A stretch of 64,000 nt of DNA, from the IMG/VR virus record IMGVR_UViG_3300036781_000418, positions 1-64,000 of that record; one strand, 5' to 3'. The notes under the pieces are model-generated. The model did not search any database, was not told the origin of the DNA, and saw only the letters and a program-made list of their open reading frames with translations. Numbering within the stretch: position 1 is the stretch's first letter; each line of letters starts with the position of its first letter. Of the stretch, positions 9,048-38,106 are shown in pieces. Made by a program: the position numbers and the translations under genes.

Positions 9048-9110
9048 CATTTAGGACGACGTCGGGGTACCACCATGCTATGATCGACGATCAACACGTG
9101 AGACCCAACC

Positions 9111-18851: not shown

Positions 18852-18896
18852 ATCGAGTTGGGTCTCAACCTTCAACGAGGTTGCAGTTGAGCGAGC

Positions 18897-18932
18897 AGCT
18901 CGTTACAATTGACTTAACAGTTGTAACGAGCT
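18897..18932. promoter_or_regulatory. 12-bp perfect inverted repeat (terminator or operator)
   Basis: AGCTCGTTACAA-N12-TTGTAACGAGCT followed by CTTCTTTT. Confidence 0.6.
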
Positions 18933-22940: not shown

Positions 22941-22971
22941 GTTTACCTGGAAAATCCGGTTTGGCTATAAT
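22941..22971 (+). promoter_or_regulatory. sigma70-type early promoter
   Basis: GTTTACC..TATAAT, preceded by GTAAC-TGTC-GTTAC. Confidence 0.65.
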
Positions 22972-23523: not shown

Positions 23524-23622
23524 ATTCGAGGACCGCAAGGTCCTCGAATCGTTTGCGGCGACGATAGGCGACGCCGGTTGAACCTGAGCTTGCATACCAA
23601 AAGAGGGACCGCAAGGTCCCTC
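23524..23622. terminator. two GGACC-GCAA-GGTCC hairpins between convergent genes
   Basis: 23524-23549 and 23603-23622, with a degenerate TAGGCGAC..GCCGGTTG repeat between them. Confidence 0.7.
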
Positions 23623-24690: not shown

Positions 24691-24750
24691 GGTGCAAGGT
24701 TGCAGATGTGATTGCTTATTTAGCATGACTCGCAGCTGAACCAGCATTTT

Positions 24751-24780
24751 GGATGCCAAGACCAGCCCGGCAGCTACAAT
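24751..24780 (+). promoter_or_regulatory. putative middle promoter GGATGC-N18-TACAAT
   Basis: Same motif and spacing at 29157, 32511 and 38077. Confidence 0.65.
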
Positions 24781-24808
24781 CAACGTTGAAATACACATAA
24801 GGTCGTCT

Positions 24809-25408
24809 ATGATCATTGGAATTAGTGGCCCGCAGGGCAGTGGCAAGACCACCGTCCTCGCCGCCCTGGAACAACGAGGTTGGAAGCTGGATCCCTACAA
24901 GGCGTCCCGCCAGGTTCAAGCTCAGCTCGAGGTGTTGAACTTGCTCGACGCCATCAAGACCCCCGAGGGCATGAAGATGTTCCAAGGGCTGGTGTTGGAG
25001 CAAAAGTGCCGGAACCTTGAGCTCATGCAACGCCAGCTGCAGGACGGTGAGCACCTCCTGACCGAACGCAGCTTCGCCGACATCGCGGCCTACGCCCAGC
25101 TCTGGTCGTTTGAGCTGGTGGACCAGCGGCGCTGGTCGTTCAGCGAGGCCATGGCGTTCAACATCGAGTTCTCGATGCGGTGCTACACGATGCAGGAAAA
25201 GTGGTTCGACCGCGTGATTCACCTGCCACGCATGCCGCACATCGTCGAGGAGAACGATCCACACCGGGCGCCAGCCAAGATGGTGGACTTCATCGACGAG
25301 CAGCTCCAGTCCTTCTACAAGCTGCAGGACCGCACCGCCACGCGCGTCATCTCGGCCCTCACGGTGGAAGACCGTGCCGACCAAATCGAATACTTCATCA
25401 ACCTCTGA
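24809..25408 (+). CDS. P-loop nucleoside/nucleotide kinase-like protein
   Basis: MIIGISGPQGSGKTT; ERS..D motif of dNMP kinase/AAA_28-type proteins. Confidence 0.75.
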   Translation: MIIGISGPQGSGKTTVLAALEQRGWKLDPYKASRQVQAQLEVLNLLDAIKTPEGMKMFQGLVLEQKCRNLELMQRQLQDGEHLLTERSFADIAAYAQLWSFELVDQRRWSFSEAMAFNIEFSMRCYTMQEKWFDRVIHLPRMPHIVEENDPHRAPAKMVDFIDEQLQSFYKLQDRTATRVISALTVEDRADQIEYFINL

Positions 25409-25410
25409 TC

Positions 25411-26031
25411 ATGGCCTACACCAAAACCTACTCCAAGTTCCATCCCGGTAAGTACGGACTGCTGATCGACTGGGAGACGACCGGCGCTGAGTTTGGCACA
25501 GACAGCTCCAAGCGTTTCCAAGGCATCGCCTTCGGGGCGATCATCTTCAACACCTCGACCTTCGAGGAAGTCGAGTCCATCTACCGTGAGGTCCAATACG
25601 ACGCCACGAAGTACGAGTGGACCGAGACCGCGGAGAAGATCCACGGCCTGTCGCGTGAGCACTTGGCCGCGAACGGCGTCACCCGTGAACAGGCCTGCGT
25701 CGACCTCTTCACGCTGATCCTCAAGTACATCGGGGCTGGCAACAAGGTGCTGTTGGCCGGCCACAACTGCGGCTTTGACGCGGACTTCACCAACCAGCTC
25801 GCGACGGACCATGGCATCGACCTGGTGCTTCACCACGTGATGCTGGACTCGTCGAGCCTCGCGTTCGCCCTTATCACGGAGTACAAGTCGGACGTCGTGT
25901 TCGAGCTGCTGGGCGGCATCGACAAGCGTGGCTTGCACAACGCCCTTGAGGACGCTCGTGCCTCGCTCGCCGTCTTCCGCAACGCGCGCCAGATCTTCGA
26001 GAAGGGCCTGTTCGCCGAGGTGAAGTCATGA
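25411..26031 (+). CDS. DEDDh 3'-5' exonuclease (DnaQ-like)
   Basis: DWETTG, HN..FD, HNALEDA. Confidence 0.9.
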   Translation: MAYTKTYSKFHPGKYGLLIDWETTGAEFGTDSSKRFQGIAFGAIIFNTSTFEEVESIYREVQYDATKYEWTETAEKIHGLSREHLAANGVTREQACVDLFTLILKYIGAGNKVLLAGHNCGFDADFTNQLATDHGIDLVLHHVMLDSSSLAFALITEYKSDVVFELLGGIDKRGLHNALEDARASLAVFRNARQIFEKGLFAEVKS

Positions 26032-26348
26032 TCGAGATTATGCAGGTCAGCAAGTGGGTTACCCTACGGCCAGGTGAGTGCTGGTACGCCAAGCTGCCAG
26101 GCAAGACTCAGGTGAGCCGCGTTATTGTGCGCGAGCTCACCAAGGTCACCGTGCTGGTCGAGGTTCTCTATGAGGAACACGGCGACATGTCGCAGTTTGG
26201 ATTCCAGCTGCCAGTCCAGCTTAACCGCTACATAGCAGATGCCGTGGGCTGGCTTGAACAGCTTGATCCACCACCTCCAAGACCTGATCCTGATCCACAA
26301 CCTTGGTGTACCGACCAGGAACAGTCACCGACCACCGCAGTAGAATGA
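26028..26348 (+). CDS. hypothetical protein
   Basis: ATGA overlap; GAGGTG RBS. Confidence 0.6.
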   Translation: MIEIMQVSKWVTLRPGECWYAKLPGKTQVSRVIVRELTKVTVLVEVLYEEHGDMSQFGFQLPVQLNRYIADAVGWLEQLDPPPPRPDPDPQPWCTDQEQSPTTAVE

Positions 26349-26354
26349 GCTTAC

Positions 26355-26567
26355 GTGACCGACACAACGTACATCCTTGAAGATATTGAAGTGAAGCGCA
26401 CGGGGCGCATTGCCAAAAAGCAACGCCGCCAAATTGTCGGTCGACCTGCCATTCCAGATGAGGTCCTCGTTGAGGTGACGCCAGTCGCGATCAACGAAGG
26501 CAACTGGAAGAAATGGGTTCCTGAAGCCAGTCTATTTGAGGTGATCAACGATGATTCTGTCAAGTGA
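26355..26567 (+). CDS. hypothetical protein
   Basis: Packed operon. Confidence 0.6.
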   Translation: MTDTTYILEDIEVKRTGRIAKKQRRQIVGRPAIPDEVLVEVTPVAINEGNWKKWVPEASLFEVINDDSVK

Positions 26568-26838
26568 AGATCCGAAGCCACGCGTGTCCTGGAACGCCAA
26601 GCAGTTAATCGACATGAAGCCGCTCAAGGCAATAACCTACTGGGCGCCGTCAACATTGCCCAAGACCGGCACCGTGTCCTTCGTGCAGTCAAAGCAACGC
26701 GCTAATCGTGGCACGACGGAAGTCGTCGTCTTAGACCTTGAAAACTTGAGCTTCGCCAAGCGGTACAAGGGGCCACGGGAGAATTCAGCCCATACCTGCC
26801 CTATCTGTGAGCGGGAGAAGTTCCACGGTCGAGGTTGA
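26551..26838 (+). CDS. hypothetical protein
   Basis: GAGGTG RBS; C-terminal CxxC. Confidence 0.5.
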   Translation: MILSSEDPKPRVSWNAKQLIDMKPLKAITYWAPSTLPKTGTVSFVQSKQRANRGTTEVVVLDLENLSFAKRYKGPRENSAHTCPICEREKFHGRG

Positions 26839-26840
26839 AG

Positions 26841-27140
26841 ATGCGCTACACCGTCATCTCCAACGTCCAGCTGTTTCTCCTTGCCATCCTGATTGGCCTG
26901 TTTTCGGCGTCCGCGGTCGTGCTAAATAGCATGTACCTCAGCTATAAGCTGCTGCCGCAGGTCATCACCGACAAATCGGGCCAGTGTGTAAAGGTCGTGA
27001 ACTTCGAAAACGGTCACGCCTTCACCTGTCAAGACGTTGATGTTGTCCTGCGACAATATCGGAAACGTTTGGACAATGACAAAGAGATACACGCGCCTGA
27101 AGTGCACGGTCTGCAGCCGAGTGAAGGATCAGCTCAATGA
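26841..27140 (+). CDS. membrane-anchored hypothetical protein
   Basis: N-terminal TM segment; two Cys in the exported part. Confidence 0.6.
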   Translation: MRYTVISNVQLFLLAILIGLFSASAVVLNSMYLSYKLLPQVITDKSGQCVKVVNFENGHAFTCQDVDVVLRQYRKRLDNDKEIHAPEVHGLQPSEGSAQ

Positions 27141-28263
27141 TCTGGGTCACTACGTTCCTGACCAGTGCACCATCACGTACCAGTGCGAGGGCCGACTCTT
27201 CCCGATCGACTACGTCTCCAACGGATCGCCGATCCTAGACGTACCACCAGTTGGCGTGTCCAACTGGTACCCTCGCGGTTCCACCTTCTCGACCACGACG
27301 GCCGCACCAGCGCCCACGCTGGTCGACACGTCAACAGGCTCTACACAGCAGGTCATCGTGGCCCTGCCGTTCACCGGCACGGCATCACCGTACCCTGACG
27401 ACGCGATCCTACGCGTCACGCTCGGCTACCAAAGCCAGTCGTCACAGGCCTTCCTGCAGTACACGTACAAGCGGTCCAGCCCGTTCACCATCATCAACGG
27501 GGTTGAGGACGGCACCGGCAAGAAGGTGCTGCGCTACAACGTCACGGGTGGTGCTCCGGACTCCGTGGTCGTGTACATCAACGGCGTCAAACGCAACCAA
27601 GGCACGGCGTCGGATCAGTACCAACTCTACGACGGCACAGTTGGATCTCCTTGCCCACCAAACTCCGTCTACTTCAACTCCACCGTAACTGGCACGTCGA
27701 CGCAGGTGGACGTGGTCGTGACCAAGGCACCTGAAGCCTCCGAGGTCGTGTTCAACTTTACCAAGATGATCGACGACGAGTCGCGGGCCGGGACCGGTGC
27801 TTGGGAAGGTGTTGAGCATGTCCGCACGTTCAACGGCAACTGGATTCTCTCTGACCTGTTCTACCTGGACTTCAGCGAGTTCGTGCCACCAACTGACCAA
27901 CCACTACCACGTGACACCCCGTTGAACGTGGCGAAGGTCGAGCTGATCACCAACGTGACGACGCCCATCTCGTCGTCCACGGTGTCCATGCTGTTGAGCC
28001 GTGAGAAGCTCCACCTCACGCTTGACCGAATTAAGTCCAGCAACGTTGCGCTGTCCGTCTTTGACGGCCTCAGCAACTGGTTGGTCTGCAAGTTTATCGA
28101 TGATGTTCGAGTGCTGCTGTTTACCGAGGCGGCTGCTACCTCCGTGTTTCCACCGATGGAGGTGTTGAGGTTCTCACCAGAGGCCTTGGCAACTACCGGC
28201 TTGGGTGGTGACACGGACGCGACGCAGCTTGATAGTGACCTGATTGTAGGACCAGACTCATGA
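27076..28263 (+). CDS. putative virion structural (baseplate-type) protein
   Basis: N-terminal CxxC..C..C; beta-rich; VYINGV motif. Confidence 0.55.
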   Translation: MTKRYTRLKCTVCSRVKDQLNDLGHYVPDQCTITYQCEGRLFPIDYVSNGSPILDVPPVGVSNWYPRGSTFSTTTAAPAPTLVDTSTGSTQQVIVALPFTGTASPYPDDAILRVTLGYQSQSSQAFLQYTYKRSSPFTIINGVEDGTGKKVLRYNVTGGAPDSVVVYINGVKRNQGTASDQYQLYDGTVGSPCPPNSVYFNSTVTGTSTQVDVVVTKAPEASEVVFNFTKMIDDESRAGTGAWEGVEHVRTFNGNWILSDLFYLDFSEFVPPTDQPLPRDTPLNVAKVELITNVTTPISSSTVSMLLSREKLHLTLDRIKSSNVALSVFDGLSNWLVCKFIDDVRVLLFTEAAATSVFPPMEVLRFSPEALATTGLGGDTDATQLDSDLIVGPDS

Positions 28264-28715
28264 TTGAAGTTCCACCAAACACCACCTGCTACTACACCGT
28301 TAAGCTTCAGGGCGAGGCGATGTTGAGCACCCTACACGATCTGTTTCCCGTAAAGTCGGGCACCTTTGACCATGCGGTCGTGGTGTCCGTCGACATGGAC
28401 TCGGACATTGAGGCGACCAACGCGGTTGAACACGCAGGCGCCAACCTCATCGGCAGCAAGTGGAAGGACTCTCGGTCCTTCAACCCACTCTACCTGCCGA
28501 TGGAACGTGACAAGCTCGTCGAACAAGTCGAGACTGACACCGACGGCAACCTCGTCGCCGTCGGTCGCTTTGAAGATCCGTTCGAGACGTACTTCCTTGA
28601 ACGCGCCGAGCCAGAGTCGGTCAACGCCTTCACTGGCAAGGTTGTCTACCATGAGTTCAAGATTCCACACCCAATGGACGTCTCACAACCATGGCCACAG
28701 AGGTACTTGGCTTGA
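28260..28715 (+). CDS. hypothetical protein
   Basis: ATGA overlap. Confidence 0.65.
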   Translation: MIEVPPNTTCYYTVKLQGEAMLSTLHDLFPVKSGTFDHAVVVSVDMDSDIEATNAVEHAGANLIGSKWKDSRSFNPLYLPMERDKLVEQVETDTDGNLVAVGRFEDPFETYFLERAEPESVNAFTGKVVYHEFKIPHPMDVSQPWPQRYLA

Positions 28716-29146
28716 ACCTCGTACCTTCTTTCAAGTTCGCGATCAACCTGAAGTTCAGGGAGATCGAGTCCATGCACGCCACGTTGCCGTCCTTCGCCCG
28801 TGCTGAGGAGCTGGTAGTGATGTCAAAGCCGTACGACACGCTCGAGGAGATCAGCGACGACGCTGGTGACGTGCTTGAGGGGCTCATTGAGTCGCTTGAG
28901 CGCAAGAACCTCGGCACGTTCAAGATCGACGTTGAGCGCAACCTCACCCTGTTCGATGTCTCGGCCGAGCCTGAGACCGAGCAGCTGGCCGCGGAGATTG
29001 AGGACTTCGACGCTGAAGAGTGGGCCGAAGGCGAGCTCACCAAGATGTGGATCTACGAGGTTGAGTCCAACCCTGACATGATCATCCCAGTTGCGCTGAT
29101 TCAGATCTACAAGGAGCTGGTCAGCGCACCGCGTCTCTACTCTTGA
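28691..29146 (+). CDS. hypothetical acidic protein
   Basis: Typical codon usage. Confidence 0.65.
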   Translation: MATEVLGLNLVPSFKFAINLKFREIESMHATLPSFARAEELVVMSKPYDTLEEISDDAGDVLEGLIESLERKNLGTFKIDVERNLTLFDVSAEPETEQLAAEIEDFDAEEWAEGELTKMWIYEVESNPDMIIPVALIQIYKELVSAPRLYS

Positions 29147-29156
29147 CCAAGTGTTG

Positions 29157-29186
29157 GGATGCATAACACGGCCACAAGCCTACAAT
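29157..29186 (+). promoter_or_regulatory. putative middle promoter GGATGC-N18-TACAAT
   Basis: Recurrent motif. Confidence 0.65.
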
Positions 29187-29212
29187 AACATACTCATCTC
29201 ATAGGAGCATAA

Positions 29213-29560
29213 ATGCAAGAGCTAGTAAAGTCACCGAAGTTCCAGCCCATCGCCTCGATCATGAAGGATCCGTTGCTGGCTAGTCGGTTGGCCACGTTCA
29301 TCGACAACGCCGTTGAGGCCAAGGGCGAGATTGCGAAGCAGAACCAACTAATCAAGGACACCGTGAAGTTGGCCTGTGATGAACTCAAGGTTGATCCAAA
29401 GCTGTTCCGCATCTACGTGGCGGCCGCGTTCAACAACGACTACGGCCTGCGTCTCCAGTCGCTGAACACGCAAGTCGACCTGCTTGAACGCATCATCATG
29501 ACCCTGCCAGGCGGCCTTGACGCCTACATGCCGCAGCTCACGAACGACGACGGCGAGTAA
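29213..29560 (+). CDS. dsbA: T4 DsbA-like double-stranded DNA-binding protein
   Basis: LATFI..A...K..I...NQLIKD....A.DEL.VD.KLF resembles T4 DsbA as recalled. Confidence 0.7.
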   Translation: MQELVKSPKFQPIASIMKDPLLASRLATFIDNAVEAKGEIAKQNQLIKDTVKLACDELKVDPKLFRIYVAAAFNNDYGLRLQSLNTQVDLLERIIMTLPGGLDAYMPQLTNDDGE

Positions 29561-29579
29561 GCAACGTCACACAACACCC

Positions 29580-29599
29580 AAGGCGCGCAAGCGCCTTTT
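29580..29599 (+). terminator. terminator
   Basis: AAGGCGC-GCAA-GCGCCTTTT. Confidence 0.75.
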
Positions 29600-29613
29600 C
29601 TGGGCAATACACT

Positions 29614-32502
29614 ATGCAAAAATCCTACATTGGCATCGCCAATGACTACCGCAGCGACCAGCTGATGGTGTGGGAACGGCCAGTTGCCGGTGGTCCACGC
29701 ACCTTGCGGTACGTCAAGCCACCCCGCTACTTCTACGTTCCAGACGAAGACGGACAGTACACCTCGATCTTCCGTCAGAAGTTGTCACGCCTTGACTTCG
29801 ACTCCAAGGACGAGTTCGACTACGCCAAGCGTCGCTACTCCCAGCGCTACGAGTCTGACATTCAGCCGCTCTACAAGTGCTTGATGAACGAGTACTACGG
29901 AGTGCCAACTCCGCAGATCAACTTCGCGCTGTTCGACATTGAAGTCGACTATGACTCGAAGCTGGGCTTTAGCTCCCACGACAACCCCTACGCACCGATC
30001 AACGCGATCACGATCTACCAGTCGTGGACGAAGGAGTACATCACCGTCGTCGTGCCACCAAAGGGCTGGGACCGTGACGTGCCAAAGCTGCTGGCTGAGA
30101 TCAAGAAGGTCGCTGACGACGCGGGCATGAAGGACCGTCCAGCACCGATCATCGCCTACAACGAGCGGGAGTTGATCGACGTCTTCCTCGACGCGATCGA
30201 AGAGGCGGACATCATCTCTGGTTGGAACTCGGACTTCTTCGACATCCCATACATCGTGCAGCGCTTGATGCGCCTGTTCGGTGATCAAGGCCACTCCAAA
30301 CTCTGCTTCCCAGGCGCCCCACGCCCACGCTCAAACGTGGTGCAGCGCTTTGGCTCGCCGTCCACCACCTACACGCTCTACGGTCGCACCCACCTCGACT
30401 ACCTGCAGCTCTTCCAGAAGTTTACCTTCGAAGGCCGCACGTCCTACGCGCTGGGCAACATCCTTCAAGAGGAAGTTGGACTCGGTAAGATCGACTACGA
30501 GGGTACCCTCGAGCAGCTGTACAACAACGACTTCGCCCGCTTTACGGTGTACAACTTCCGAGATGTCTCGGGCATGGTTGATCTCGACGCGAAGTTCAAG
30601 TTCATCCAACTGGTCAACCAGATGGCGCACGAGAACACGTGCCAGTTCATGAACATTCTGGGTACCGTTCGCTACGTCGAGACGGGCATCATGAACTTCG
30701 CCCACCACGTGCACCAGCTCATCTGCCCTGACAAGTTCATCTCCAGCGAGAAGAACCGCAAGGTGGAAGGTGCGGTTGTACTGTCGCCTCAGAAGGGCCT
30801 GCACAAGTGGCTTGGTTCAGTGGACATCAACTCACTGTACCCATCGGTCATTCGCGCCCTCAACATGTCGGTCGAGACGTTCGTTGGACAGTTCCAAGGT
30901 GAGGACCTTGACTGGATCGCGTTGTTCGACGACCGTGAACGCAAGCGCAACGTCACCAAGCACTTCAAGCAGTTTGGTACCCTGCACAACGTTCGCTACC
31001 GCTCACCTGAGGACATGCTGGAACGGCGTGCTAAGTCCTACTCGATGTACCACGCCGACGGCTCCACCACGACCAAGACATGGTTTGAATGGCGTGACTG
31101 GTTGAAGGACAACAAGTATTCGGTGTCGGCCTTCGGCACGGTGTTCAACCAAGAGCATGTTGGCATGGTCGCCGGGGTGCTGACCTTCTGGTACGGCGAA
31201 CGTAAGCGTCTCCAAGCCGAGAAGAAGAAGTGGGGCAAGATTGTCAAGGATCTTAGCGCTGAGTATTCCGAATATGTAGCCAAGCACAGTGGCGGATCAT
31301 ATGGTGATAGTGATGAGCTTCACGAGCGAATCAAAAACGCAACGGCTGAAGCGGAAAAGATCTATGGTTCAGATTTGAACCATGCCAAACGACAGGAGGA
31401 GCACTTCGACCTGCTTCAGCTGACGAAGAAGATCCAGTTGAACTCAACCTACGGCGCCCTCCTTAACGAGGCCTTCCTCTTCGGTCGTCGAGAGATTGGT
31501 GCGTCGGTTACCGCCACTGGCCGTGAAATCACGCTCTTCATGAACGAGCAGATCGGTACCGCCGCAACTGGAGAGGCGGCTGAGATCGAGAAGTACATGG
31601 CGATCGAGACCGACGATGAAGGCTACCCCGAAGTCGTCAACATCTACATCTCAGCGTGTGACGCCAACATCGCGGCCGACACGGACTCCGCGTACTTCAA
31701 GACCTACGCTGAGAACAAGGAGGACGCGGTTGCGATCGCCGATCACCTGGCCGACCACGTCAACGAGATGTTCCCTGGCTTCATGGAGAAGTTTTTCAAC
31801 ACCCAAGGTGATCGCTCCAAGCTGATCGTCGGCGGACGTGAGATCGTGGGTAAGAGTGGCCTCTTCATGGACGTCAAGAAGAAGTACACCATCAAGGTGG
31901 TGGACAAGGAAGGCAAGGCGGTTGATGAGTTGAAGTCCATGGGCTCTGAGCTCAAGAAGGCCGACACCCCGAAGGTCGTGCAGAACTTCCTCAAGGCGCT
32001 GATGGAGCTTGTGCTGGACAGTGAACCTTACCCAACCATCGAGAAGTTCGTCAACGACAACCGCATCGGCTTGATCAAGAAAAACTCCGAGATTCTGGCG
32101 CTGGGCACGGCCAAGCAGGTGAACAACCTCGACTCCAAGTACGCGGAGTGGGAACGAGTTGAGAAGCCAAAGAAGGGTAAGGTCAACTTGCCTGGCCACG
32201 TTCGAGCGGCCATCAACTACAACGAGCTCGTCAAGCAGTTCGAGGAAGGCGCGAAGCAGATCCAGACTGGTGACAAGGTCGTGATCTTCTACGTGAAGAT
32301 GAACCAGTTCAACATCAAGTCCATTGGGTTTCCGTCGGACAAGATGCACGTTCCAGAATGGTTCACTGAAAACTTCCAAGTGGACATGGCCTTGACCGAG
32401 GAAAAGCTGATCGACGCCAAGCTGGCCGGCATCTTCAACGCCCTCGACTGGGAGGTGCCGACCCTTCAGCGTTCGTACCTTTCAGCGTCCTTCGACTTCT
32501 AG
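29614..32502 (+). CDS. family B DNA polymerase (gp43-like)
   Basis: Exo FDIE, WN..FD, YN..D; motif A DINSLYPS; motif B KIQLNSTYG; motif C DTDS. Confidence 0.97.
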   Translation: MQKSYIGIANDYRSDQLMVWERPVAGGPRTLRYVKPPRYFYVPDEDGQYTSIFRQKLSRLDFDSKDEFDYAKRRYSQRYESDIQPLYKCLMNEYYGVPTPQINFALFDIEVDYDSKLGFSSHDNPYAPINAITIYQSWTKEYITVVVPPKGWDRDVPKLLAEIKKVADDAGMKDRPAPIIAYNERELIDVFLDAIEEADIISGWNSDFFDIPYIVQRLMRLFGDQGHSKLCFPGAPRPRSNVVQRFGSPSTTYTLYGRTHLDYLQLFQKFTFEGRTSYALGNILQEEVGLGKIDYEGTLEQLYNNDFARFTVYNFRDVSGMVDLDAKFKFIQLVNQMAHENTCQFMNILGTVRYVETGIMNFAHHVHQLICPDKFISSEKNRKVEGAVVLSPQKGLHKWLGSVDINSLYPSVIRALNMSVETFVGQFQGEDLDWIALFDDRERKRNVTKHFKQFGTLHNVRYRSPEDMLERRAKSYSMYHADGSTTTKTWFEWRDWLKDNKYSVSAFGTVFNQEHVGMVAGVLTFWYGERKRLQAEKKKWGKIVKDLSAEYSEYVAKHSGGSYGDSDELHERIKNATAEAEKIYGSDLNHAKRQEEHFDLLQLTKKIQLNSTYGALLNEAFLFGRREIGASVTATGREITLFMNEQIGTAATGEAAEIEKYMAIETDDEGYPEVVNIYISACDANIAADTDSAYFKTYAENKEDAVAIADHLADHVNEMFPGFMEKFFNTQGDRSKLIVGGREIVGKSGLFMDVKKKYTIKVVDKEGKAVDELKSMGSELKKADTPKVVQNFLKALMELVLDSEPYPTIEKFVNDNRIGLIKKNSEILALGTAKQVNNLDSKYAEWERVEKPKKGKVNLPGHVRAAINYNELVKQFEEGAKQIQTGDKVVIFYVKMNQFNIKSIGFPSDKMHVPEWFTENFQVDMALTEEKLIDAKLAGIFNALDWEVPTLQRSYLSASFDF

Positions 32503-32510
32503 CCACCGTA

Positions 32511-32540
32511 GGACGCCAAGCGCGCCCTACCCACTATAAT
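32511..32540 (+). promoter_or_regulatory. putative middle promoter GGACGC-N18-TATAAT
   Basis: Recurrent motif; ATG only 6 nt downstream. Confidence 0.65.
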
Positions 32541-32546
32541 TGACCT

Positions 32547-33329
32547 ATGAAGCTTACCTCAACACAGATTGGCCATCTTCGAACGGCCCTGACGGCGGCT
32601 AAGACGGCCAACGTCTCGCAAGTCGCGTTGTACGCCAACATGATCCGCGGCGTCTCGGACACGGAGAACTCGATCATCTTCTCCAAGCTCGACCTAGGGC
32701 TGGCTATGGATGTCCAAGTTGGCATCGGCAACGTCGACACCCTCGTCAAGCGGCTCATGATCTTCGGTGACGCTGGCCTGACGTTGGAGGGTGAAGTCGG
32801 CGCCGACAACCAGACCATCAAGCGTCTCTCGATCAAGGCGCCAAACGGCAAGACCGAGTTCCGTTGCAGCTCGATTAAGCACATCAAGCACCCCAAGAAC
32901 ACGCCAGATGACCTGGACAACATCACCCTTGCCCGTGACACGAAGGTCGCGACGCTCGTCTTGACGTTGGAGGAGCTCCAACAGCTTTCACGTGGGGCGA
33001 AGACCCTTGGCACCGAGGCGATCACCATCCAGCTCAAGGCAGACGGTGGCGTCAAGGCGGAGTGCTACGACACCGACAACAACGTCTTCACGATCACGCT
33101 AAAGAACCCATGCGTGTTCGAAGATGATGAGTTCTCGGTTGTACATAGCTATGCAGCGGGATCAAGTGGTGTACTCCTGACCCTCATGGAGAACATGGCG
33201 CGTGAGCGTCAAGGTGAGGAGCTGATCGAGTTCCCGCTGTATAGCAACGGCATGATTGGTTGCCGTGTAAACGGTCACTTCATCTTGGCGGCCAAACGAG
33301 CCGACCGTGACGAAGGCGACGACGAATAA
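32547..33329 (+). CDS. possible DNA sliding clamp
   Basis: 260 aa with two alpha/beta halves, immediately after the polymerase; function inferred from size and position only. Confidence 0.45.
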   Translation: MKLTSTQIGHLRTALTAAKTANVSQVALYANMIRGVSDTENSIIFSKLDLGLAMDVQVGIGNVDTLVKRLMIFGDAGLTLEGEVGADNQTIKRLSIKAPNGKTEFRCSSIKHIKHPKNTPDDLDNITLARDTKVATLVLTLEELQQLSRGAKTLGTEAITIQLKADGGVKAECYDTDNNVFTITLKNPCVFEDDEFSVVHSYAAGSSGVLLTLMENMARERQGEELIEFPLYSNGMIGCRVNGHFILAAKRADRDEGDDE

Positions 33330-33337
33330 GGATTGAT

Positions 33338-33706
33338 ATGCATAACGAAGACTTTGAAAAGAACCGCATCGAATACGTGATGCTGATTGAAAACCAGCTG
33401 CGCCACGCGAAGCATGAGCTCGCGATCGCCAAGGCCGCGGTCACCGCGTGGGAACCGAAGTTCTCCACCGAGATGAACATTGGCAGCGACTCCACCAAGG
33501 TGTCCCTTACCTTCGGTGGCAAGGTCGCCGCGTTCTCGGTGAACGACGCTTGGCTCAACGCAACCTCTGCCACCGACGCCTGCGTCGACGTCGTCGACAA
33601 GCTCGTTGAGGCGATCGTGGCCGAGAAGCTGCGTGAGCTGCTCCGCCCGCAGCTTGAACACGTCAAGGCCAACATTCAGGTGCGGGCCGCATCAGGGAAG
33701 TGGTAA
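33338..33706 (+). CDS. hypothetical protein
   Basis: AAGGA RBS. Confidence 0.7.
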   Translation: MHNEDFEKNRIEYVMLIENQLRHAKHELAIAKAAVTAWEPKFSTEMNIGSDSTKVSLTFGGKVAAFSVNDAWLNATSATDACVDVVDKLVEAIVAEKLRELLRPQLEHVKANIQVRAASGKW

Positions 33707-34017
33707 TGTTTGAGAAGCTCATCCGTAAGCTCTTCACCTCTCAGCAGGAGAAGTCCAAGGAACCTTGGGCCTCCTTTGAGATCAGCAACGTCGACAAGAG
33801 TGGACGAGCTCAAGTGTCCTTCGCCTGGAATCAGGCCTTCCTCACGTACATCCACGCACAGGGCGTGCAAGCTGAGACCGATGAGGAGAGCGTCCAGCTC
33901 TTCTTCATGATGGCCCGCATGTCTCCTGAGGAACAGGCCATGTTGGGTGGTGACGAGCCGGTCCAGTCGGCCGCGCACCCTAACTTGAGCCAGCCAGTTA
34001 ACCGTTTTTACTCGTAA
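33706..34017 (+). CDS. hypothetical protein
   Basis: TAATG overlap; FAWN..F..TDEE.V pattern. Confidence 0.7.
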   Translation: MFEKLIRKLFTSQQEKSKEPWASFEISNVDKSGRAQVSFAWNQAFLTYIHAQGVQAETDEESVQLFFMMARMSPEEQAMLGGDEPVQSAAHPNLSQPVNRFYS

Positions 34018-34023
34018 GATCAA

Positions 34024-35070
34024 ATGACCAAACGCCTTGTAGTTGATTGCGCAAACATGTTTTGGAGGGCAGTCGCCGCCCAACAGCGGTACGGCTCTCC
34101 AGACGCCAAGGAAAGCGCCGGTTTCGGTCTCCACATGTCGCTGATGTCGCTGCGCAAGCAGTGGAACGCCATCAAGCCTGACAAGATGGCCATCGTCTTC
34201 GAAGGCAAGGCTAACTGGCGGAAAGACTACACGCGCTCTGAGGCCTGCGTTTCCAAGCGCCTCTACAAGGGCAACCGAGTCGCTGATCCGTCCATGGCGA
34301 TTCTTGGTGAGGTGATCAGGTCGTTTGAGGAGCTGGCACGGCTGCACTCCAACATCACCTGCCTCTCACACATGAAGCTTGAAGGCGATGATCTGATTGC
34401 CGGCTACGCCCAACACTTCAGCAAGCTGGGTGATGAGGTCACCATCCTCTCAGGTGACAAGGACTTCGTCCAGCTGTTGGACAATCCACTCATTAGCTTG
34501 GTCAACCCAGAAGATGGCAAGAAGCGCACGCTCCTTGACGTCTGTGGTGTTGAGACCCCAGGGTACTTCATCTTTGAGAAGTGCTTCCGCGGCGACGCTG
34601 GTGACAACGTGCTGACGGCTTACCCACGCGCCGCCTCCAAGAAAATGAAGAAGGCGTTCGGGGTCGACAGTCCAGCCGACAGCTTCGAGCTCTCCAACCT
34701 CATGGCCCACACGTGGACGTTGCGTGACAAGGACACGGGCGACGACCGTGAAATGAAGACCAACGAGATGTTCGCCGAGAACAAGCTGCTGATGGACCTC
34801 ACAGCTCAGCCACCTGAGATTCGTGAGCTGATCACGCAGACGATCGTGGAGGAGAGCGAGAAGACGGGCAAGTTCAACTACTTCCACTTCTCCAAGTTCC
34901 TCGGCCAATACGACCTGAAGCAGATCAGCGAACGCAGTCAAGACTTCGTGGAGATGCTGTCAGGTCGTCACCCAGCCTCAGTTGAACGCAACCGTCAACC
35001 CGCCGCTCAAAGCGGCACGGTGGCCGCCGCTATCCAGAAGATCAACCAAAGCCGTGGGTTTGACCTGTGA
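34024..35070 (+). CDS. rnh: T4 RNase H-like 5'-3' exonuclease/flap endonuclease
   Basis: VD..N, WRK, YKGNR, EGDD, SGDKDF.QL, GD.GDN. Confidence 0.92.
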   Translation: MTKRLVVDCANMFWRAVAAQQRYGSPDAKESAGFGLHMSLMSLRKQWNAIKPDKMAIVFEGKANWRKDYTRSEACVSKRLYKGNRVADPSMAILGEVIRSFEELARLHSNITCLSHMKLEGDDLIAGYAQHFSKLGDEVTILSGDKDFVQLLDNPLISLVNPEDGKKRTLLDVCGVETPGYFIFEKCFRGDAGDNVLTAYPRAASKKMKKAFGVDSPADSFELSNLMAHTWTLRDKDTGDDREMKTNEMFAENKLLMDLTAQPPEIRELITQTIVEESEKTGKFNYFHFSKFLGQYDLKQISERSQDFVEMLSGRHPASVERNRQPAAQSGTVAAAIQKINQSRGFDL

Positions 35071-35306
35071 AGCTGCTGAAAGCTGAGACCATCTTCGACA
35101 ACGATACGTTTGAACCGCGCCACCGACTGACGGTGGAAGTTAGTCAGACGTTCATCGACGATGTGCAGTTGTACGAAGGACTGCGGACCGACATAGCCCA
35201 GGTGATTGGACTTCGGTTTATGGAGCTAATCGATCAGCTGATAACGGCCAACGCTGCGCTTTCTAAACTGAACCCTTCGGTGCAGCTTGGCGAAGCGCAG
35301 CCTTAG
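35067..35306 (+). CDS. hypothetical protein
   Basis: GTGA overlap. Confidence 0.5.
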   Translation: MKLLKAETIFDNDTFEPRHRLTVEVSQTFIDDVQLYEGLRTDIAQVIGLRFMELIDQLITANAALSKLNPSVQLGEAQP

Positions 35307-35793
35307 TCGCCCTAGCCTTCATCTCAGGCACCTTGTCGTCGAGGAACTTAGCGACCTCGACGGCGTCGATGATCCGAACCTTAGTTGGCTTGGAGACGCC
35401 GTTAGCGTAGAAGATGTTCCAACCACCCTGCCTAAACTCCATCTCAACGCTGACCCTTACGGCCTCCGCTTTTGGTACGTCCCAGAACGCGAAGATGTGG
35501 TGTGACGCATAGCTGGTCTTAAGGGCCTGGCCATTGTCCACGGTCAAGCCAAGCTTTTCCAGCTTCTTCATGAACAGGTGCTGGTCAACGTCCAGGTCTT
35601 CTGGCTCATGGGCGCCGGTAACTCGGCTTACGACGCCGTCAATCTGTGCGGCTGATAGAATGTCCGACAAGATATCGGCCAACTTGTCCTGTACTTGCTT
35701 AGGATCGTCCACCTGGGCGAAGGCGTCGTGTAGGGCCTTAAGCTTGTTAGTTTTGCTGTCGACTGAGGCCTCGAAAAGGTGCTGGATATGCAT
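35263..35793 (-). CDS. putative internal head protein
   Basis: MHIQHLFEA leader; TAAATA at 35817-35822 on minus. Confidence 0.65.
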   Translation of the reverse strand: MHIQHLFEASVDSKTNKLKALHDAFAQVDDPKQVQDKLADILSDILSAAQIDGVVSRVTGAHEPEDLDVDQHLFMKKLEKLGLTVDNGQALKTSYASHHIFAFWDVPKAEAVRVSVEMEFRQGGWNIFYANGVSKPTKVRIIDAVEVAKFLDDKVPEMKARATKAALRQAAPKGSV

Positions 35794-35816
35794 GGATCGG
35801 CGTCCGGTAGTTTCTC

Positions 35817-35841
35817 TATTTATGGCCGGCCTCGCTAAATA
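35817..35841. promoter_or_regulatory. divergent late promoters
   Basis: TATTTA at 35817-35822 and TAAATA at 35836-35841. Confidence 0.65.
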
Positions 35842-35930
35842 AGCCATGACCGCAAGGTCTAGCAAAGGGTTCGGCTCCATCTTCTTGGCGCTGGTAAATC
35901 GTTCACGATGTCCCGCTAAAGGAGAGAAAC

Positions 35931-36356
35931 ATGGCTACAATTGAAAAGCGCGCTACGTCCCTGAACCACGTGTTCCTGATCGACTGGCATGACGACGGCA
36001 TCCTACGCGAAATCATCGTCGTGATGGAGGATAAGGTCGGTGCAATCTACGGCATCGAAGTTAACCGCCTTCACCCAATCGACAAGGGTCGCCTCAAGAA
36101 GGTGATCACGTCCATCCACTCGGACAAGTACTCGCTGTGGCAGCTGCTCGCCGACTCACGTCTGCCTAACGGCATGAACGCCCTTGACTTCTTCCACGCT
36201 AACTACGTGAAGGTCAAGCGTCCTCGTGGCTCGATCGGTGCAATGTCCATGGGTGGCACGATGGCTGATATTCAGATCACCAACGAGTCCGACAAGGTTA
36301 TCGGCTCAGGCTTCACCTCAGGTGTGGCTACGGCGGCTGAACCTACGTCGATGTAA
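35931..36356 (+). CDS. hypothetical protein
   Basis: AGGAG RBS; strong codon bias. Confidence 0.8.
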   Translation: MATIEKRATSLNHVFLIDWHDDGILREIIVVMEDKVGAIYGIEVNRLHPIDKGRLKKVITSIHSDKYSLWQLLADSRLPNGMNALDFFHANYVKVKRPRGSIGAMSMGGTMADIQITNESDKVIGSGFTSGVATAAEPTSM

Positions 36357-36376
36357 CCTGCGACCTGGTAGTACGG

Positions 36377-36400
36377 AGAGGTTCTTCGGAACCTCTTTTT
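36377..36400 (+). terminator. terminator
   Basis: AGAGGTTC-TTCG-GAACCTCT plus T run. Confidence 0.85.
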
Positions 36401-36443
36401 GGCCTCTGCTGTGTTACTATTTTTGAACTGAGAGGAGCACAGC

Positions 36444-36746
36444 ATGGATGAAGAAGTTTACAAGGTCTCCATTGTCGGTGACCTGCCTGAGATCGTCAAG
36501 GGAGTTACCGTCGAGATTGACGACGAACTGCCACGACACACGACCACGTTTGCGTGCCTCTGTGGCGGCGACAACGTGATTGAAGCACCGAGCACGCCCG
36601 ACGAAATCAATGGTCAGCTCAACTGCAACCGCGACTACGCGTGCTGCTGCGTTGCCTTCACCTGTCCTAAGTGCGGGCTTCGTTATGCCGGCAGTCAGGC
36701 CGCTCCAGAGTACATCCCAGACTATGAGCTGGACTCTGAAGATTAA
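36444..36746 (+). CDS. Cys-rich putative zinc-ribbon protein
   Basis: CxC, C..CC, CPKC; AGGAG RBS. Confidence 0.65.
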   Translation: MDEEVYKVSIVGDLPEIVKGVTVEIDDELPRHTTTFACLCGGDNVIEAPSTPDEINGQLNCNRDYACCCVAFTCPKCGLRYAGSQAAPEYIPDYELDSED

Positions 36747-36816
36747 ACCAGTTGGCCGATGGTCAACGTCAGAGGTGCTCACGCACCCTTCATGATCAAC
36801 CACAAAAGGAGTCATC

Positions 36817-37449
36817 ATGCGGCGCATCCTACTTGCGTTGACGGTCGTTCTGTCCTCGTCAGCTTTCCTAATCAACTACGCCTTCTCGGAGATGCCTCAG
36901 GCCAAGGGCACGGTCGTCATCGGCGAGAAGCCCACCTACATCAAAGGCAACCAAGCGGTCACCCTCCTGCCGACCGACCTCAACATGAGCCAGGCCCAGC
37001 TCCTCAGCAAGGCCTATGAGATCGCGAAGGCCGACGGCCACAAGGATCCAGAGCTCGTGCAGGGCATTATCCTTCAGGAGTCTGAGGCGGGTCGGGCCAC
37101 GGCCTACCGCGTTGCAGGCTCGAAGTCGGAGCCGTACTACGGCGTCGGTCAAGTGAAGCTGGACGCGACGCGTGACGTCATGTCGGCCTACCCAGCCATG
37201 TGGACGAAGTACCGCTTCCAAACGAAGACGGACGATGAGCTCAAGGCCTACTTGATCTTGAACAACGTCTTCAACATGGAGGTGACGTCCAAGTACCTCC
37301 GCATCTTGGAAGTTCGCTACGGCCTCTCTGGTCGCGACCTGCTGAACGCCTACCAGAAGGGGCCAGGTGGCTACAAGGAAGTTGACCCTGATGAGTACCA
37401 CTACGCCCGTGGGGTTGAGGACAAGCTGGCAAGGATGAAGCGTCGATGA
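36817..37449 (+). CDS. lytic transglycosylase (SLT-like) with N-terminal signal/anchor
   Basis: QES catalytic motif, GVGQV, AYQKG, Y..V; hydrophobic N-terminus. Confidence 0.8.
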   Translation: MRRILLALTVVLSSSAFLINYAFSEMPQAKGTVVIGEKPTYIKGNQAVTLLPTDLNMSQAQLLSKAYEIAKADGHKDPELVQGIILQESEAGRATAYRVAGSKSEPYYGVGQVKLDATRDVMSAYPAMWTKYRFQTKTDDELKAYLILNNVFNMEVTSKYLRILEVRYGLSGRDLLNAYQKGPGGYKEVDPDEYHYARGVEDKLARMKRR

Positions 37450-37988
37450 TGAAGAATATCGTGCTACCGCAGATCAAACGCGTCGTGCCATCCACCGTGG
37501 TGATGACGAACGTTGGTGTGCAACCAATGTCGGCACCAAGTGGGATACTACCAATGCTTAGGTACAATTTCACTCCCAACGTTGTCACTGTTGACATTGC
37601 GCGACCAACTATCATGTTGATCACGCATGACCAGTATATGGAGTTAAGATGTAAGAATAGCGTCGTTGACACTTGCGTAGCTCGCTCATGGCCAGTTGAC
37701 GCAATTATGGCATGGCTCCAGTCAAACATCGATCCAGAAGGCTCAATCATCATCCATGTCAATCAGCTTAGCTTGATTGTCTCATCTGGTATTTGGTCTG
37801 GTATACTAAAAGGGCGGGCTTACTTGTATAGCCTAGGGCAAGATAAAGGATTGTCCTTTCACTTTAACGGCATGATCGCTTTGGTTGGGTTAGATGAACT
37901 TACGCCTGTTAAACAGCGGGCCGCATTCTCGCGACTTCGGTTGATCGCGCCCAAGACGCAAATCATCCCCGGCAAGTACAAGCTCTAA
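37446..37988 (+). CDS. hypothetical protein with N-terminal major-capsid (Gol-like) segment
   Basis: IKRVVP..VGVQPMSAPSG..LR matches the T4 gp23 RRAIP..GVQPMNSPTG..LR segment; remainder unrelated and more AT-rich. Confidence 0.65.
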   Translation: MMKNIVLPQIKRVVPSTVVMTNVGVQPMSAPSGILPMLRYNFTPNVVTVDIARPTIMLITHDQYMELRCKNSVVDTCVARSWPVDAIMAWLQSNIDPEGSIIIHVNQLSLIVSSGIWSGILKGRAYLYSLGQDKGLSFHFNGMIALVGLDELTPVKQRAAFSRLRLIAPKTQIIPGKYKL

Positions 37989-37998
37989 GCACCGCTAC

Positions 37999-38038
37999 GG
38001 CGACACGAGAGGCCACCGGCTCATACGGTGGCCTCTCT
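37999..38038 (+). repeat. GGCGACACGAG-family repeat fused to a terminator hairpin
   Basis: GGCGACACGAGAGG, then GAGAGGCCACCG..CGGTGGCCTCTC. Confidence 0.75.
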
Positions 38039-38076
38039 TCATTTAGCTCTACAACCTAAGCGGCCCACAGCAACTG

Positions 38077-38106
38077 GGACGCACGTCGTGGCTCGATCGT
38101 TACAAT
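38077..38106 (+). promoter_or_regulatory. putative middle promoter GGACGC-N18-TACAAT
   Basis: Recurrent motif upstream of the primase-helicase operon. Confidence 0.65.

What the first reader, a model, noticed from the sequence alone, without database searches (positions are those of the whole stretch)
24751..38106. Putative middle-promoter class GGAYGC-N18-TAYAAT in front of replication genes
Seen: four sites at gene junctions with identical 18-nt spacing. They are GGATGC 24751/TACAAT 24775 (kinase-exonuclease), GGATGC 29157/TACAAT 29181 (dsbA-polymerase), GGACGC 32511/TATAAT 32535 (putative clamp) and GGACGC 38077/TACAAT 38101 (primase-helicase). A near match, GGACGA-N19-TATGAT, precedes the RNA ligase (9054-9084). 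None has TTGACA. Known: T4 middle promoters pair a sigma70 -10 with a phage-activator (MotA) box, whose sequence differs from this one. Inference: an unrecognised phage activator or sigma-remodelling factor defines a middle transcription class.
Basis: partly seen in the sequence, partly recalled or inferred. Interest (0 to 1): 0.68.

Follow-up and report, generated by a model that had tools for sequence, protein, structure and literature searches.

The report
Non-canonical promoter class before replication genes
Four look-alike promoter sites in front of the DNA-replication genes of an uncultured 343-kb soil phage are real, and they belong to a wider set of about 24 promoters that carry a GG-box where the normal -35 element should be, which suggests, without proving it, a phage-specific "middle" switch unlike the one known from phage T4.

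Summary
GGAYGC-N18-TAYAAT occurs four times in the window, at the stated coordinates. It occurs nowhere else in the 342,591-bp genome and at no other spacing. All four sites are intergenic and point at replication genes.

The genome is a jumbo phage with direct terminal repeats and 57% GC. Its nearest isolate is Ralstonia phage RsoM2USA (44% DNA polymerase identity). It has no RNA polymerase of its own but has a T4 gp55-type late sigma.

Three promoter-like classes stand out:
- Late: sTAAATAg.
- Early-like class B: GTTACA-N8-9-tGTACA-N16-17-TAGAAT.
- Class A, about 24 sites: R-GG-W-Y-G 19-21 nt before TAYAAT, TAGAAT or TATGAT, often with (A/T)CC 8-9 nt further upstream.

The four sites lack a usable -35 and lack TGn. 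MotA, AsiA and Mor homologues are absent. Dependence on an unknown factor is therefore plausible but untested: there are no RNA data and no close relatives.

The parts
24737..24742 (+). Upstream element TGAACC of site 1; its CC lies 8 nt before the GG of the box
   Evidence: Sequence. CC 8-9 nt upstream of GG occurs in 16/24 class A sites versus 4/19 coding controls, p=0.005.
24751..24780 (+). Site 1: GGATGC box (24751-24756), 18-nt spacer, -10 TACAAT (24775-24780). It lies before the kinase-like gene 24809-25408 and the RNase_T exonuclease gene 25405-26031.
   Evidence: It sits in a divergent 118-nt intergenic region. The opposite gene 23653-24690(-) has a late-type TAAATA at 24722.
29144..29148 (+). 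Upstream element TGACC of site 2; its TGA is the stop codon of the preceding gene 28691-29146
29157..29186 (+). Site 2: GGATGC box, 18-nt spacer, -10 TACAAT (29181-29186). It lies before the DsbA-like gene 29213-29560 and the family-B DNA polymerase gene 29614-32502.
32511..32549 (+). Site 3: GGACGC box (32511-32516), -10 TATAAT (32535-32540), then 6 nt and the ATG (32547) of the sliding-clamp gene. This predicts a leaderless mRNA.
   Evidence: phrog_223. No Shine-Dalgarno sequence is present. Eleven genes in the genome have the same hexamer-N6-ATG geometry.
38007..38037 (+). Strong intrinsic terminator hairpin just upstream of site 4, which makes site 4 the start of its own transcription unit
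   Evidence: 12-bp stem, 9 GC pairs, T-rich tail.
38077..38106 (+). Site 4: GGACGC box, 18-nt spacer, -10 TACAAT (38101-38106). It lies before the 99-aa ORF 38141-38440, the primase gene 38437-39474 and the DnaB-like helicase gene 39571-40962.
9054..9084 (+). Relaxed member: GGACGA-N19-TATGAT (with TGc before the hexamer) before the T4-type RNA ligase 1 gene 9111-10268
18867..18909 (+). GGTT-type member of the same class in the window: AACC-N8-GGTTG-N20-TACAAT before ORF 18953-19249

Best explanation
The four sites are promoters read by the host's sigma-70-type RNA polymerase; the phage has no polymerase of its own. Sigma region 2 would recognise the TAYAAT -10 hexamer, and transcription would start about 7 nt downstream. 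At the clamp gene that start point is the A of the ATG, giving a leaderless mRNA.

Where a -35 hexamer should be (about -36 to -31), the sites carry GGAYGC. This is the tight subtype of a genome-wide class of about 24 promoters. The class has R-GG-W-Y-G at that position and, in two thirds of cases, (A/T)CC 8-9 nt further upstream. It serves replication, recombination, nucleotide-metabolism, DNA-modification and tRNA genes.

Two other classes are separate from it: an early-like class (GTTACA...tGTACA...TAGAAT, before orphan small ORFs) and T4-type late promoters (sTAAATAg, used with a gp55-like sigma).

The GGAYGC subtype has neither a usable -35 nor TGn. I therefore infer that full activity needs an extra protein that contacts the GG-box and replaces the sigma region 4/-35 contact. 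That protein is most likely phage-coded and unrelated to MotA/AsiA. This would make the class the functional counterpart of T4 middle promoters.

Shown: the motif, its statistics, its gene context, the three classes, and the absence of MotA, AsiA and Mor. Inferred: the start sites, the timing, and the existence and origin of the factor.
For: Motif and uniqueness. Family-wise p of about 0.013.

Relaxed pattern: GGAYG-N19/20-TAnRAT gives 14 sites, 11 of them noncoding. The 19 permuted control boxes give 0-2 noncoding sites, except for four boxes: YGGGA (5) and GGGAY (6), which are shifted readings of the same sites, and GGYGA (4).

Evidence that the -10 hexamers function:
- Noncoding share: TACAAT 33/46, TAGAAT 24/39, TATAAT 10/16, against 10.5% noncoding DNA.
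- A at +7 after the hexamer in 44/79 sites.
- A sharp spike of 11 genes with ATG exactly 6 nt after the hexamer.

The GG-box as a class feature:
- GG[AT][CT] lies 19-22 nt upstream in 32/140 noncoding versus 19/202 coding hexamers.
- GG precedes the -35 triplet in 7/12 TTG, 4/7 TTA, 4/8 TTC, 7/10 ACG and 3/10 ATG cases.
- The left CC element is present in 16/24 versus 4/19 sites, p=0.005.

Subtype differences:
- GGA-type sites have G at the fifth position in 10/10 and C at the sixth in 7/10; GGT-type sites have 7/13 and 4/13 (alignment).
- GGA-type sites cluster in the replication arc, 6/10 versus 2/14, p=0.03.

Gene functions downstream of class A.

Late system: gp55 homologue with phrog_234 at E=9e-30; 81 of 111 TAAATA copies are noncoding; structural genes lie behind them.

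Absent families: MotA N- and C-terminal domains, AsiA and Mor. No second sigma was found.

Relative: RsoM2USA keeps class B and the late motif, but has a different box (yTTAGGA, 11-13 nt from TAYAAT) in its third class. That pattern is what co-evolution with a phage factor would produce.

T4 facts are taken from PMC2988021.
Against: - No transcript data exist. Only the source soil DNA run holds the sequence.
- No relative is closer than about 44% polymerase identity, so no base of the box is shown to be under selection.
- The pattern is absent from RsoM2USA and four IMG/VR relatives.
- The corrected significance is modest (p of about 0.013).
- GGAYGC alone is not enriched in noncoding DNA.
- Some relaxed members sit in terminator stems, for example 159713.
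- GGTT-type members have TTG at 16-18 nt spacing and could work with sigma-70 alone, so the 'class' may be two things.
- Site 1 has a 4/6 match to the -35 consensus.
- No candidate DNA-binding or anti-sigma protein was found among 20 early-like ORFs or in the 99-aa ORF behind site 4.
- The host and its own promoter consensus are unknown.
Confidence: 0.45

Rival explanations
1. These are ordinary host sigma-70 promoters that need no phage factor. The GG-box is only a weak or host-specific -35 region, and class A is simply the phage's medium-to-weak constitutive (early or delayed-early) promoter set. The GGAYGC sites are its weakest members.
For: GGTT-type members carry TTG at 16-18 nt from the -10 hexamer. 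Site 1 has ATGCCA, a 4/6 match, at 16 nt and passes the generic sigma-70 scan. All -10 hexamers are 5-6/6 matches to TATAAT. The host consensus is unknown. No activator gene was found.
Against: Sites 2-4 match TTGACA at only 1-3 of 6 positions and lack TGn. In well-studied systems such promoters are weak without help. GG, and in the GGA subtype also G and C at positions 5 and 6, are conserved just where sigma region 4 would not need them. A separate, better-matching class B exists for early-like genes.
Confidence: 0.3
2. The -10 hexamers are real promoters, but the recurrence of GGAYGC at N18 is a coincidence among about 40-80 promoters, helped by GC-rich spacers.
For: The family-wise test gives only p of about 0.013. 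The box alone is not enriched in noncoding DNA. There is no conservation in relatives.
Against: A second, independent test with relaxed -10 hexamers gives 11 noncoding sites, while nearly all permuted control boxes give 0-2. GG at this position is shared with the GGTT members. The four sites cluster in one functional module.
Confidence: 0.1
3. The (A/T)CC-N8-9-GG(W) arrangement is a dyad operator centred near -41/-42 for a dimeric regulator. This would be either a class II activator of the CRP/FNR or Mu Mor type, or a repressor that shuts these genes off later.
For: Perfect AACC-N8-10-GGTT dyads overlap the -35 position at 18867, 224836, 315632, 299410 and 277797; the last is shared by two divergent genes. 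The left CC element is enriched.
Against: The symmetry does not extend beyond 3-4 bp, and position +4 is G where a palindrome needs C. The spacer varies from 7 to 10 nt. Most of the genome-wide AACC-N10-GGTT excess comes from an unrelated repeat between tRNA genes and from hairpins. No Mor homologue is present.
Confidence: 0.1
4. An alternative sigma factor (ECF-like, whose -35 is GGAAC/GGAAT with a 17-18 nt spacer), from the host or the phage, reads GGAYGC directly.
For: The box sits where a -35 element sits, with an 18-nt spacer. It resembles the GGAAY -35 elements of ECF sigmas (from my own knowledge, not tested here).
Against: The -10 hexamer is a classical TAYAAT, not the GTT/CGTC type of ECF promoters. 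The only sigma-like gene in the phage is the gp55 homologue. Sigma70_r2 and r4_2 searches gave nothing else above noise.
Confidence: 0.05

Closest known systems
Bacteriophage T4 middle promoters (MotA box plus sigma-70 -10; sigma appropriation by MotA/AsiA)
   Same: Both have a host-type -10 hexamer and a phage-specific box in place of the -35 element. Both sit before replication, recombination, nucleotide-metabolism and tRNA genes. Both coexist with a stronger early class and with gp55-type late promoters (PMC2988021).
   Different: The box sequence is GGAYGC / R-GG-W-Y-G rather than (a/t)(a/t)(a/t)TGCTTtA. The box lies 18 nt from the -10 hexamer (about -36 to -31) rather than 12 +/- 1 (centred at -30). 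There is often a second element about 14 nt upstream. No MotA or AsiA homologue is present. Activation has not been demonstrated.
Class II activator-dependent promoters (CRP/FNR at -41.5; phage Mu Mor and C at -43.5)
   Same: The -35 element is weak or absent. A partly symmetric element overlaps the -35 region, centred near -41/-42 in the best members.
   Different: The symmetry covers only 3-4 bp. The spacer is variable. No Mor homologue is present.
Promoter set of Ralstonia phage RsoM2USA (nearest isolate; promoters not described in PMC8504454)
   Same: It shares the GTTACA...tGTACA...TATAAT class, TAAATA late motifs, TAYAAT-type third-class promoters in the syntenic replication module, and some leaderless genes.
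   Different: Its third-class box is yTTAGGA, 11-13 nt from the -10 hexamer. GGAYG-N19-TAYAAT is absent. Its GC content is 41% versus 57%.
Canonical sigma-70 -35/-10 promoters
   Same: The -10 hexamer is TAYAAT, and a purine lies about 7 nt downstream.
   Different: The four sites match TTGACA at only 1-4 of 6 positions and have no TGn.

Membership tests
T4-type middle promoter (MotA/AsiA dependent) | Sigma-70-type -10 element | tested here: met
   TACAAT or TATAAT at all four sites.
T4-type middle promoter (MotA/AsiA dependent) | MotA box (a/t)(a/t)(a/t)TGCTTtA 12 +/- 1 bp upstream of the -10 element | tested here: not met
   The sequences show no TGCTT. The conserved box is GGAYGC at 18 bp. 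The T4 definition is from PMC2988021.
T4-type middle promoter (MotA/AsiA dependent) | motA and asiA genes in the phage genome | tested here: not met
   PF09114, PF09158 and PF09010 gave no match at E<=1 in six-frame searches of the complete genome.
T4-type middle promoter (MotA/AsiA dependent) | Activity that depends on early phage proteins and appears after early transcription | not testable with these tools
   No RNA run holds the sequence. The phage is known only from a soil metagenome.
Canonical sigma-70 -35/-10 promoter | -35 hexamer close to TTGACA, 16-18 nt from the -10 hexamer, or a TGn extended -10 | tested here: not met
   The best matches are 4/6, 2/6, 3/6 and 1/6 by my reading. There is no TGn. 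Only site 1 passes the generic scan.
T4-type late promoter (gp55) | TATAAATA-like element at -10 with no -35 element | tested here: not met
   The four sites have no TAAATA. The genome's late motif sTAAATAg lies elsewhere, for example at 24722(-) and 35822(-).
Class II dimeric-activator promoter (CRP/FNR, Mu Mor type) | Inverted repeat at fixed spacing, centred near -41.5/-43.5 | tested here: inconclusive
   The left CC element is present in 16/24 class members, but the symmetry covers only 3-4 bp, the spacer is 7-10 nt, and sites 3 and 4 lack it.
ECF-sigma promoter | GGAAC-like -35, a GTT/CGTC-type -10, and a cognate ECF sigma gene | tested here: not met
   The -10 hexamer is TAYAAT. No Sigma70_r2 or r4_2 gene is found beyond the gp55 homologue.

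The most novel reading that the evidence does not exclude
A jumbo-phage lineage that shares T4's late machinery has evolved its own way of redirecting host RNA polymerase to replication genes, unrelated to MotA/AsiA. In this reading an unknown early protein reads R-GG-W-Y-G(C) at -36 to -31, sometimes with (A/T)CC near -46, and stands in for the sigma region 4/-35 contact. The box would co-evolve with the factor: it is GGAYGC here and yTTAGGA in RsoM2USA.
Probability: 0.3. Interest if true: 0.7.

Novelty: new variant of a known kind. Interest (0 to 1): 0.5.

Why it matters
Sigma appropriation by MotA/AsiA is the textbook case of a phage re-aiming host polymerase. It is known only from close T4 relatives. 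How the many distant T4-like and jumbo phages that lack these genes time their replication genes is unknown.

This genome offers a clean sequence-level handle on that question. It has three separable promoter classes, one of which has a defined non-canonical box. That box could be used as bait to fish out the factor. It could also help annotate transcription units in uncultured jumbo phages. The recurrent leaderless start geometry is a second, independently testable feature.

Tried and rejected
- Transcript evidence. The run search found only the source soil-metagenome DNA, so read laying was not used and no start site could be checked.
- Phylogenetic footprinting. Scans of viral contigs and metagenome contigs with the polymerase found nothing above about 40% identity. 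The nearest isolate has 44% identity and 41% GC. Two IMG/VR relatives turned out very AT-rich (27% GC for G001) and uninformative. The XacN1 replication region shows late motifs but no GG-box.
- Exact pattern in relatives. There were no matches in RsoM2USA or in four IMG/VR genomes.
- Strong-palindrome idea. Most of the AACC-N10-GGTT excess comes from a repeat between tRNA genes and from hairpins, so I downgraded this to a rival.
- Factor hunt. MotA, AsiA and Mor are absent. A weak Sigma70_r4_2 hit at 275963-276067 lies in a 303-aa ORF with no Pfam or PHROG support. The 99-aa ORF behind site 4 has only a sub-threshold DUF4880 hit and uninformative Atlas neighbours. Twenty ORFs behind class B promoters gave no DNA-binding family.
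- Human-gut contig. One locus returned by the metagenome scan (L092) comes from a human-gut metagenome. It is a viral polymerase fragment and was not used further.
- Complex prediction. No complex-prediction job was sent, because there was no candidate pair.

Full report
**1. What the window is.** The window is bases 1-64000 of a 342,591-bp virus record. The record has direct terminal repeats, is rated complete and has 57% GC. My crude gene caller gave 472 genes covering 89.5% of the genome, 377 of them on the + strand. The family-B DNA polymerase (29614-32502) is most similar to that of Ralstonia phage RsoM2USA (343.8 kb, 44% identity). Next come the Stenotrophomonas and Xanthomonas jumbo phages (CM1, RAS14, XacN1, Xoo-sp13) and other T4-like jumbo phages at about 30%. 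Viral and metagenome contig scans found nothing closer. The only sequencing run that holds the stretch is a soil metagenome, probably the source. The RsoM2USA paper reports no phage RNA polymerase and contains no promoter analysis (PMC8504454).

**2. The observation.** GGAYGC-N18-TAYAAT matches at 24751, 29157, 32511 and 38077. Shuffles of the window give a mean of 0.02 matches. These four are the only matches in the genome, and no other spacing from 12 to 25 gives any match.
- 24809-25408 is an AAA_28 kinase-like gene, and 25405-26031 is an RNase_T exonuclease.
- 29213-29560 is DsbA-like (phrog_639), followed by the polymerase.
- 32547-33329 is a processivity factor (phrog_223).
- 38437-39474 has a Toprim domain (primase), and 39571-40962 is a DnaB-type helicase.
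- 9111-10268 is a T4 RNA ligase 1.

The pattern was chosen after looking, so I ran a family-wise test. Over the 43 noncoding TAYAAT hexamers I counted every 6-mer with one two-fold degenerate position at every fixed offset. The best count was 4, reached by GGA[CT]GC at -24 and by CTGA[CT]C at -39. Nulls reached 4 in 5-6 of 400 trials, so p is about 0.013. The signal is real but not overwhelming.

**3. Are the hexamers functional -10 elements?** The internal evidence is good.
- Noncoding DNA is 10.5% of the genome, yet it holds 33 of 46 TACAAT, 24 of 39 TAGAAT, 10 of 16 TATAAT and 21 of 46 TATGAT copies.
- TAYAAT is strongly biased towards the coding strand, 52 copies versus 10.
- A is enriched 7 nt after the hexamer, in 44 of 79 sites.
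- The distance from the hexamer to the start codon is bimodal. There is a broad peak at 29-42 nt (leader with a Shine-Dalgarno sequence) and a sharp spike of 11 genes at exactly 12 nt, all starting with ATG.

The clamp gene (site 3) belongs to that spike. It has TATAAT, then tgacct, then ATG, and no Shine-Dalgarno sequence. The PHROG alignment places the protein's N-terminus at this ATG. These genes are therefore best read as leaderless mRNAs, which in turn fixes the start point 7 nt after the hexamer.

**4. Promoter classes in the genome.** Reading all intergenic upstream regions and counting k-mers against coding-region controls separates three classes.

Late class:
- The motif is sTAAATAg. 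It has 111 copies, 81 of them noncoding.
- 68 copies have a same-strand start codon within 80 nt, at a median of 32 nt.
- A gp55-type late sigma is encoded at 113344-113826 (phrog_234, E=9e-30).
- Virion and tail-fibre-like genes lie behind several of these motifs.

Class B:
- The motif is cGTTACAc-N8-9-tGTACA-N16-17-TAGAAT or TATAAT. There are 5 full copies, all noncoding. 9 of the 11 GTTAC-N28-34-TAnAAT matches are noncoding.
- It mostly lies before small ORFs with no known family, which is an early-like profile.
- The same architecture occurs in RsoM2USA.

Class A:
- The motif is R-GG-W-Y-G, 19-21 nt before the hexamer.
- GG[AT][CT] at 19-22 nt occurs at 32 of 140 noncoding hexamers versus 19 of 202 coding ones.
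- GG precedes whatever triplet occupies the first three -35 positions: 7/12 for TTG, 4/7 for TTA, 4/8 for TTC, 7/10 for ACG and 3/10 for ATG.
- 16 of 24 curated members also have CC 8-9 nt upstream of the GG, typically as tGA(a/t)CC. Only 4 of 19 coding controls do (p=0.005).

They are the GGA subtype of class A. There are 10 GGA-type members: 9079, 24775, 29181, 32535, 38101, 159738, 253832, 287292, 312451 and 324911. There are 14 GGT-type members.

With the -10 hexamer relaxed to TAnRAT and the spacing to 19-20 nt, GGAYG gives 14 sites, 11 of them noncoding. The 19 permuted control boxes give 0-2 noncoding sites, except for four boxes: YGGGA (5) and GGGAY (6), which are shifted readings of the same sites, and GGYGA (4).

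The subtype is tighter than GGTT. G follows in 10 of 10 GGA-type sites and C in 7 of 10, against 7 of 13 and 4 of 13 in GGT-type sites. It uses TATGAT in 4 of 10 cases versus 0 in the GGT-type. It is concentrated in the arc from 320 kb across the genome ends to 45 kb, which holds the replication module: 6 of 10 versus 2 of 14, p=0.03.

GGTT-type members have TTG at a normal 16-18 nt spacing, so they could be read by sigma-70 directly. The four GGAYGC sites match TTGACA at only 4, 2, 3 and 1 of 6 positions and have no TGn (my reading). A strong terminator at 38007-38037 isolates site 4 as the head of its own transcription unit.

**6. Function of the genes served.** Class A promoters precede the following genes:
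- RNA ligase, kinase-like gene and exonuclease.
- DsbA-like gene and polymerase; clamp; primase and helicase.
- SbcD-like nuclease (114413) and a nucleotidyltransferase (169290).
- A polymerase-exonuclease-like gene (277135, minus strand).
- A thymidylate-synthase-family gene (308452) and a beta-glucosyltransferase (315703).
- Guanylate kinase (318045), a NUDIX hydrolase (324945) and an ATPase or helicase-like gene (312515).
- With 215590, the head of a tRNA cluster.

None precedes a recognisable structural gene. This gene set is the kind T4 expresses from middle promoters (PMC2988021).

**7. Mechanism.** The phage must use host polymerase. The late switch is T4-like. For class A the simplest reading is a sigma-70 holoenzyme bound through the -10 hexamer. 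In the GGAYGC subtype the -35 contact would be replaced by a protein that reads the GG-box. MotA (both domains), AsiA and Mor are absent, and no second sigma is present. Any such factor would therefore be new.

A hint that it is phage-coded comes from RsoM2USA. That phage keeps class B and the late motif, but its third class of TAYAAT promoters, several of them in the syntenic replication module, carries a different box. The box is yTTAGGA, with TTAG at a fixed -17 in 13 of 92 noncoding TAYAAT sites. The box pattern occurs at 23 of 92 noncoding versus 18 of 316 coding sites. GGAYG-N19-TAYAAT is absent there.

This reasoning rests on analogy and remains unproven. I put about 0.8 on the sites being promoters, about 0.6 on the GG-box being a functional element, and about 0.35-0.45 on factor dependence.

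**8. Rivals.**
- Host sigma-70 alone (0.3).
- Coincidence of the box (0.1).
- A dyad operator for a dimeric activator or repressor (0.1). Only 3-4 bp are symmetric, the spacer varies, and much of the apparent dyad excess comes from a repeat between tRNA genes.
- An ECF-like sigma (0.05). The -10 type is wrong and no such gene is present.

**9. Limits.**
- My gene calls are crude.
- Class membership was curated by eye from regex hits.
- The subtype statistics rest on 10 versus 14 sites.
- No relative is close enough for footprinting.
- There are no RNA data.
- The host is unknown.

**10. Verdict.** In kind it is a new variant of the known theme of phage middle promoters that pair a host -10 element with a phage-specific upstream box, in a lineage without MotA/AsiA. 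I score interest at about 0.5.

Noticed in passing
Genome G000: -10 hexamers at 32535 (window), 133027, 142035, 144271, 156235, 159738, 234809, 249564, 253832, 287292, 320776: Eleven genes have a -10-like hexamer exactly 6 nt before their ATG and no Shine-Dalgarno sequence. This appears as a sharp spike at distance 12 against a broad 29-42 nt peak, and it predicts leaderless mRNAs. Three similar cases occur in RsoM2USA.
   Followed up: partly
Window 19793-19835, 22930-22971, 50575-50620; genome 170876, 268266, 270577, 275246, 320739: A second promoter class, cGTTACAc-N8-9-tGTACA-N16-17-TAGAAT or TATAAT, lies before orphan small ORFs. Three copies (19830, 270614, 275283) also share the start region TAGAATTCA(A)CTCATGC. 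The same architecture is present in Ralstonia phage RsoM2USA at 186184(+) and 103169(-) despite its 41% GC.
   Followed up: partly
Window TAAATA at 1673, 11027, 43863, 44168, 44198, 48663 (+) and 11019, 24722, 35822, 43816, 54227, 54251, 55324, 58063, 60692 (-); sigma gene at G000 113344-113826: These are T4-type late promoters with consensus sTAAATAg. There are 111 in the genome, 81 of them noncoding. They occur with a gp55-like late sigma (phrog_234) and lie before virion or tail-fibre-like genes.
   Followed up: partly
RsoM2USA MG752970 (loci L050-L067), e.g. 334279(-), 263794(+), 340659(-), 215102(-), 43531(-): RsoM2USA has its own undescribed box, yTTAGGA, 11-13 nt upstream of TAYAAT. TTAG sits at a fixed -17 in 13 of 92 noncoding sites. 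This is the same distance as the T4 MotA box but a different sequence.
   Followed up: partly
G000 216779-221880 (loci L109-L110): Seven copies of AACCG-N9-GGTTATC lie between tRNA genes. ARAGORN finds 40 tRNA genes between 199.8 and 259.4 kb. These copies may be processing or hairpin elements.
   Followed up: no
Window 23603-23622(-), 47920-47945; many other intergenic sites: A terminator hairpin with a conserved sequence, AGGGACC-N4-GGTCCCT followed by T-rich tails, recurs. It is the strongest dyad signal in the intergenic DNA.
   Followed up: no
G000 315703-316863 and 308452-309453 (locus L114): A beta-glucosyltransferase (phrog_7922) and a thymidylate-synthase-family enzyme both sit behind class A promoters. 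The phage DNA may carry a glucosylated hydroxymethyl base, which would affect how proteins read C-containing boxes such as GGAYGC.
   Followed up: no
Window 24786-24813: A second sigma-70-like match, TTGAAA-N16-TATGAT, overlaps the kinase gene's start codon just downstream of site 1. It is probably chance, but it would confuse 5'-end mapping.
   Followed up: no
G000 232606-233439 and 233588-234475 (locus L110): A protein with a PEP-CTERM sorting motif and a papain-family protease lie behind a class B promoter. PEP-CTERM points to a host that has an exosortase.
   Followed up: no
G000 277775(-) / 277797-277815 / 277862(+): One AACC-N10-GGTT dyad lies between two divergent genes. It has a TATAAT on one side and a TACGAT/GATAAT on the other, which suggests a shared bidirectional control region.
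   Followed up: no
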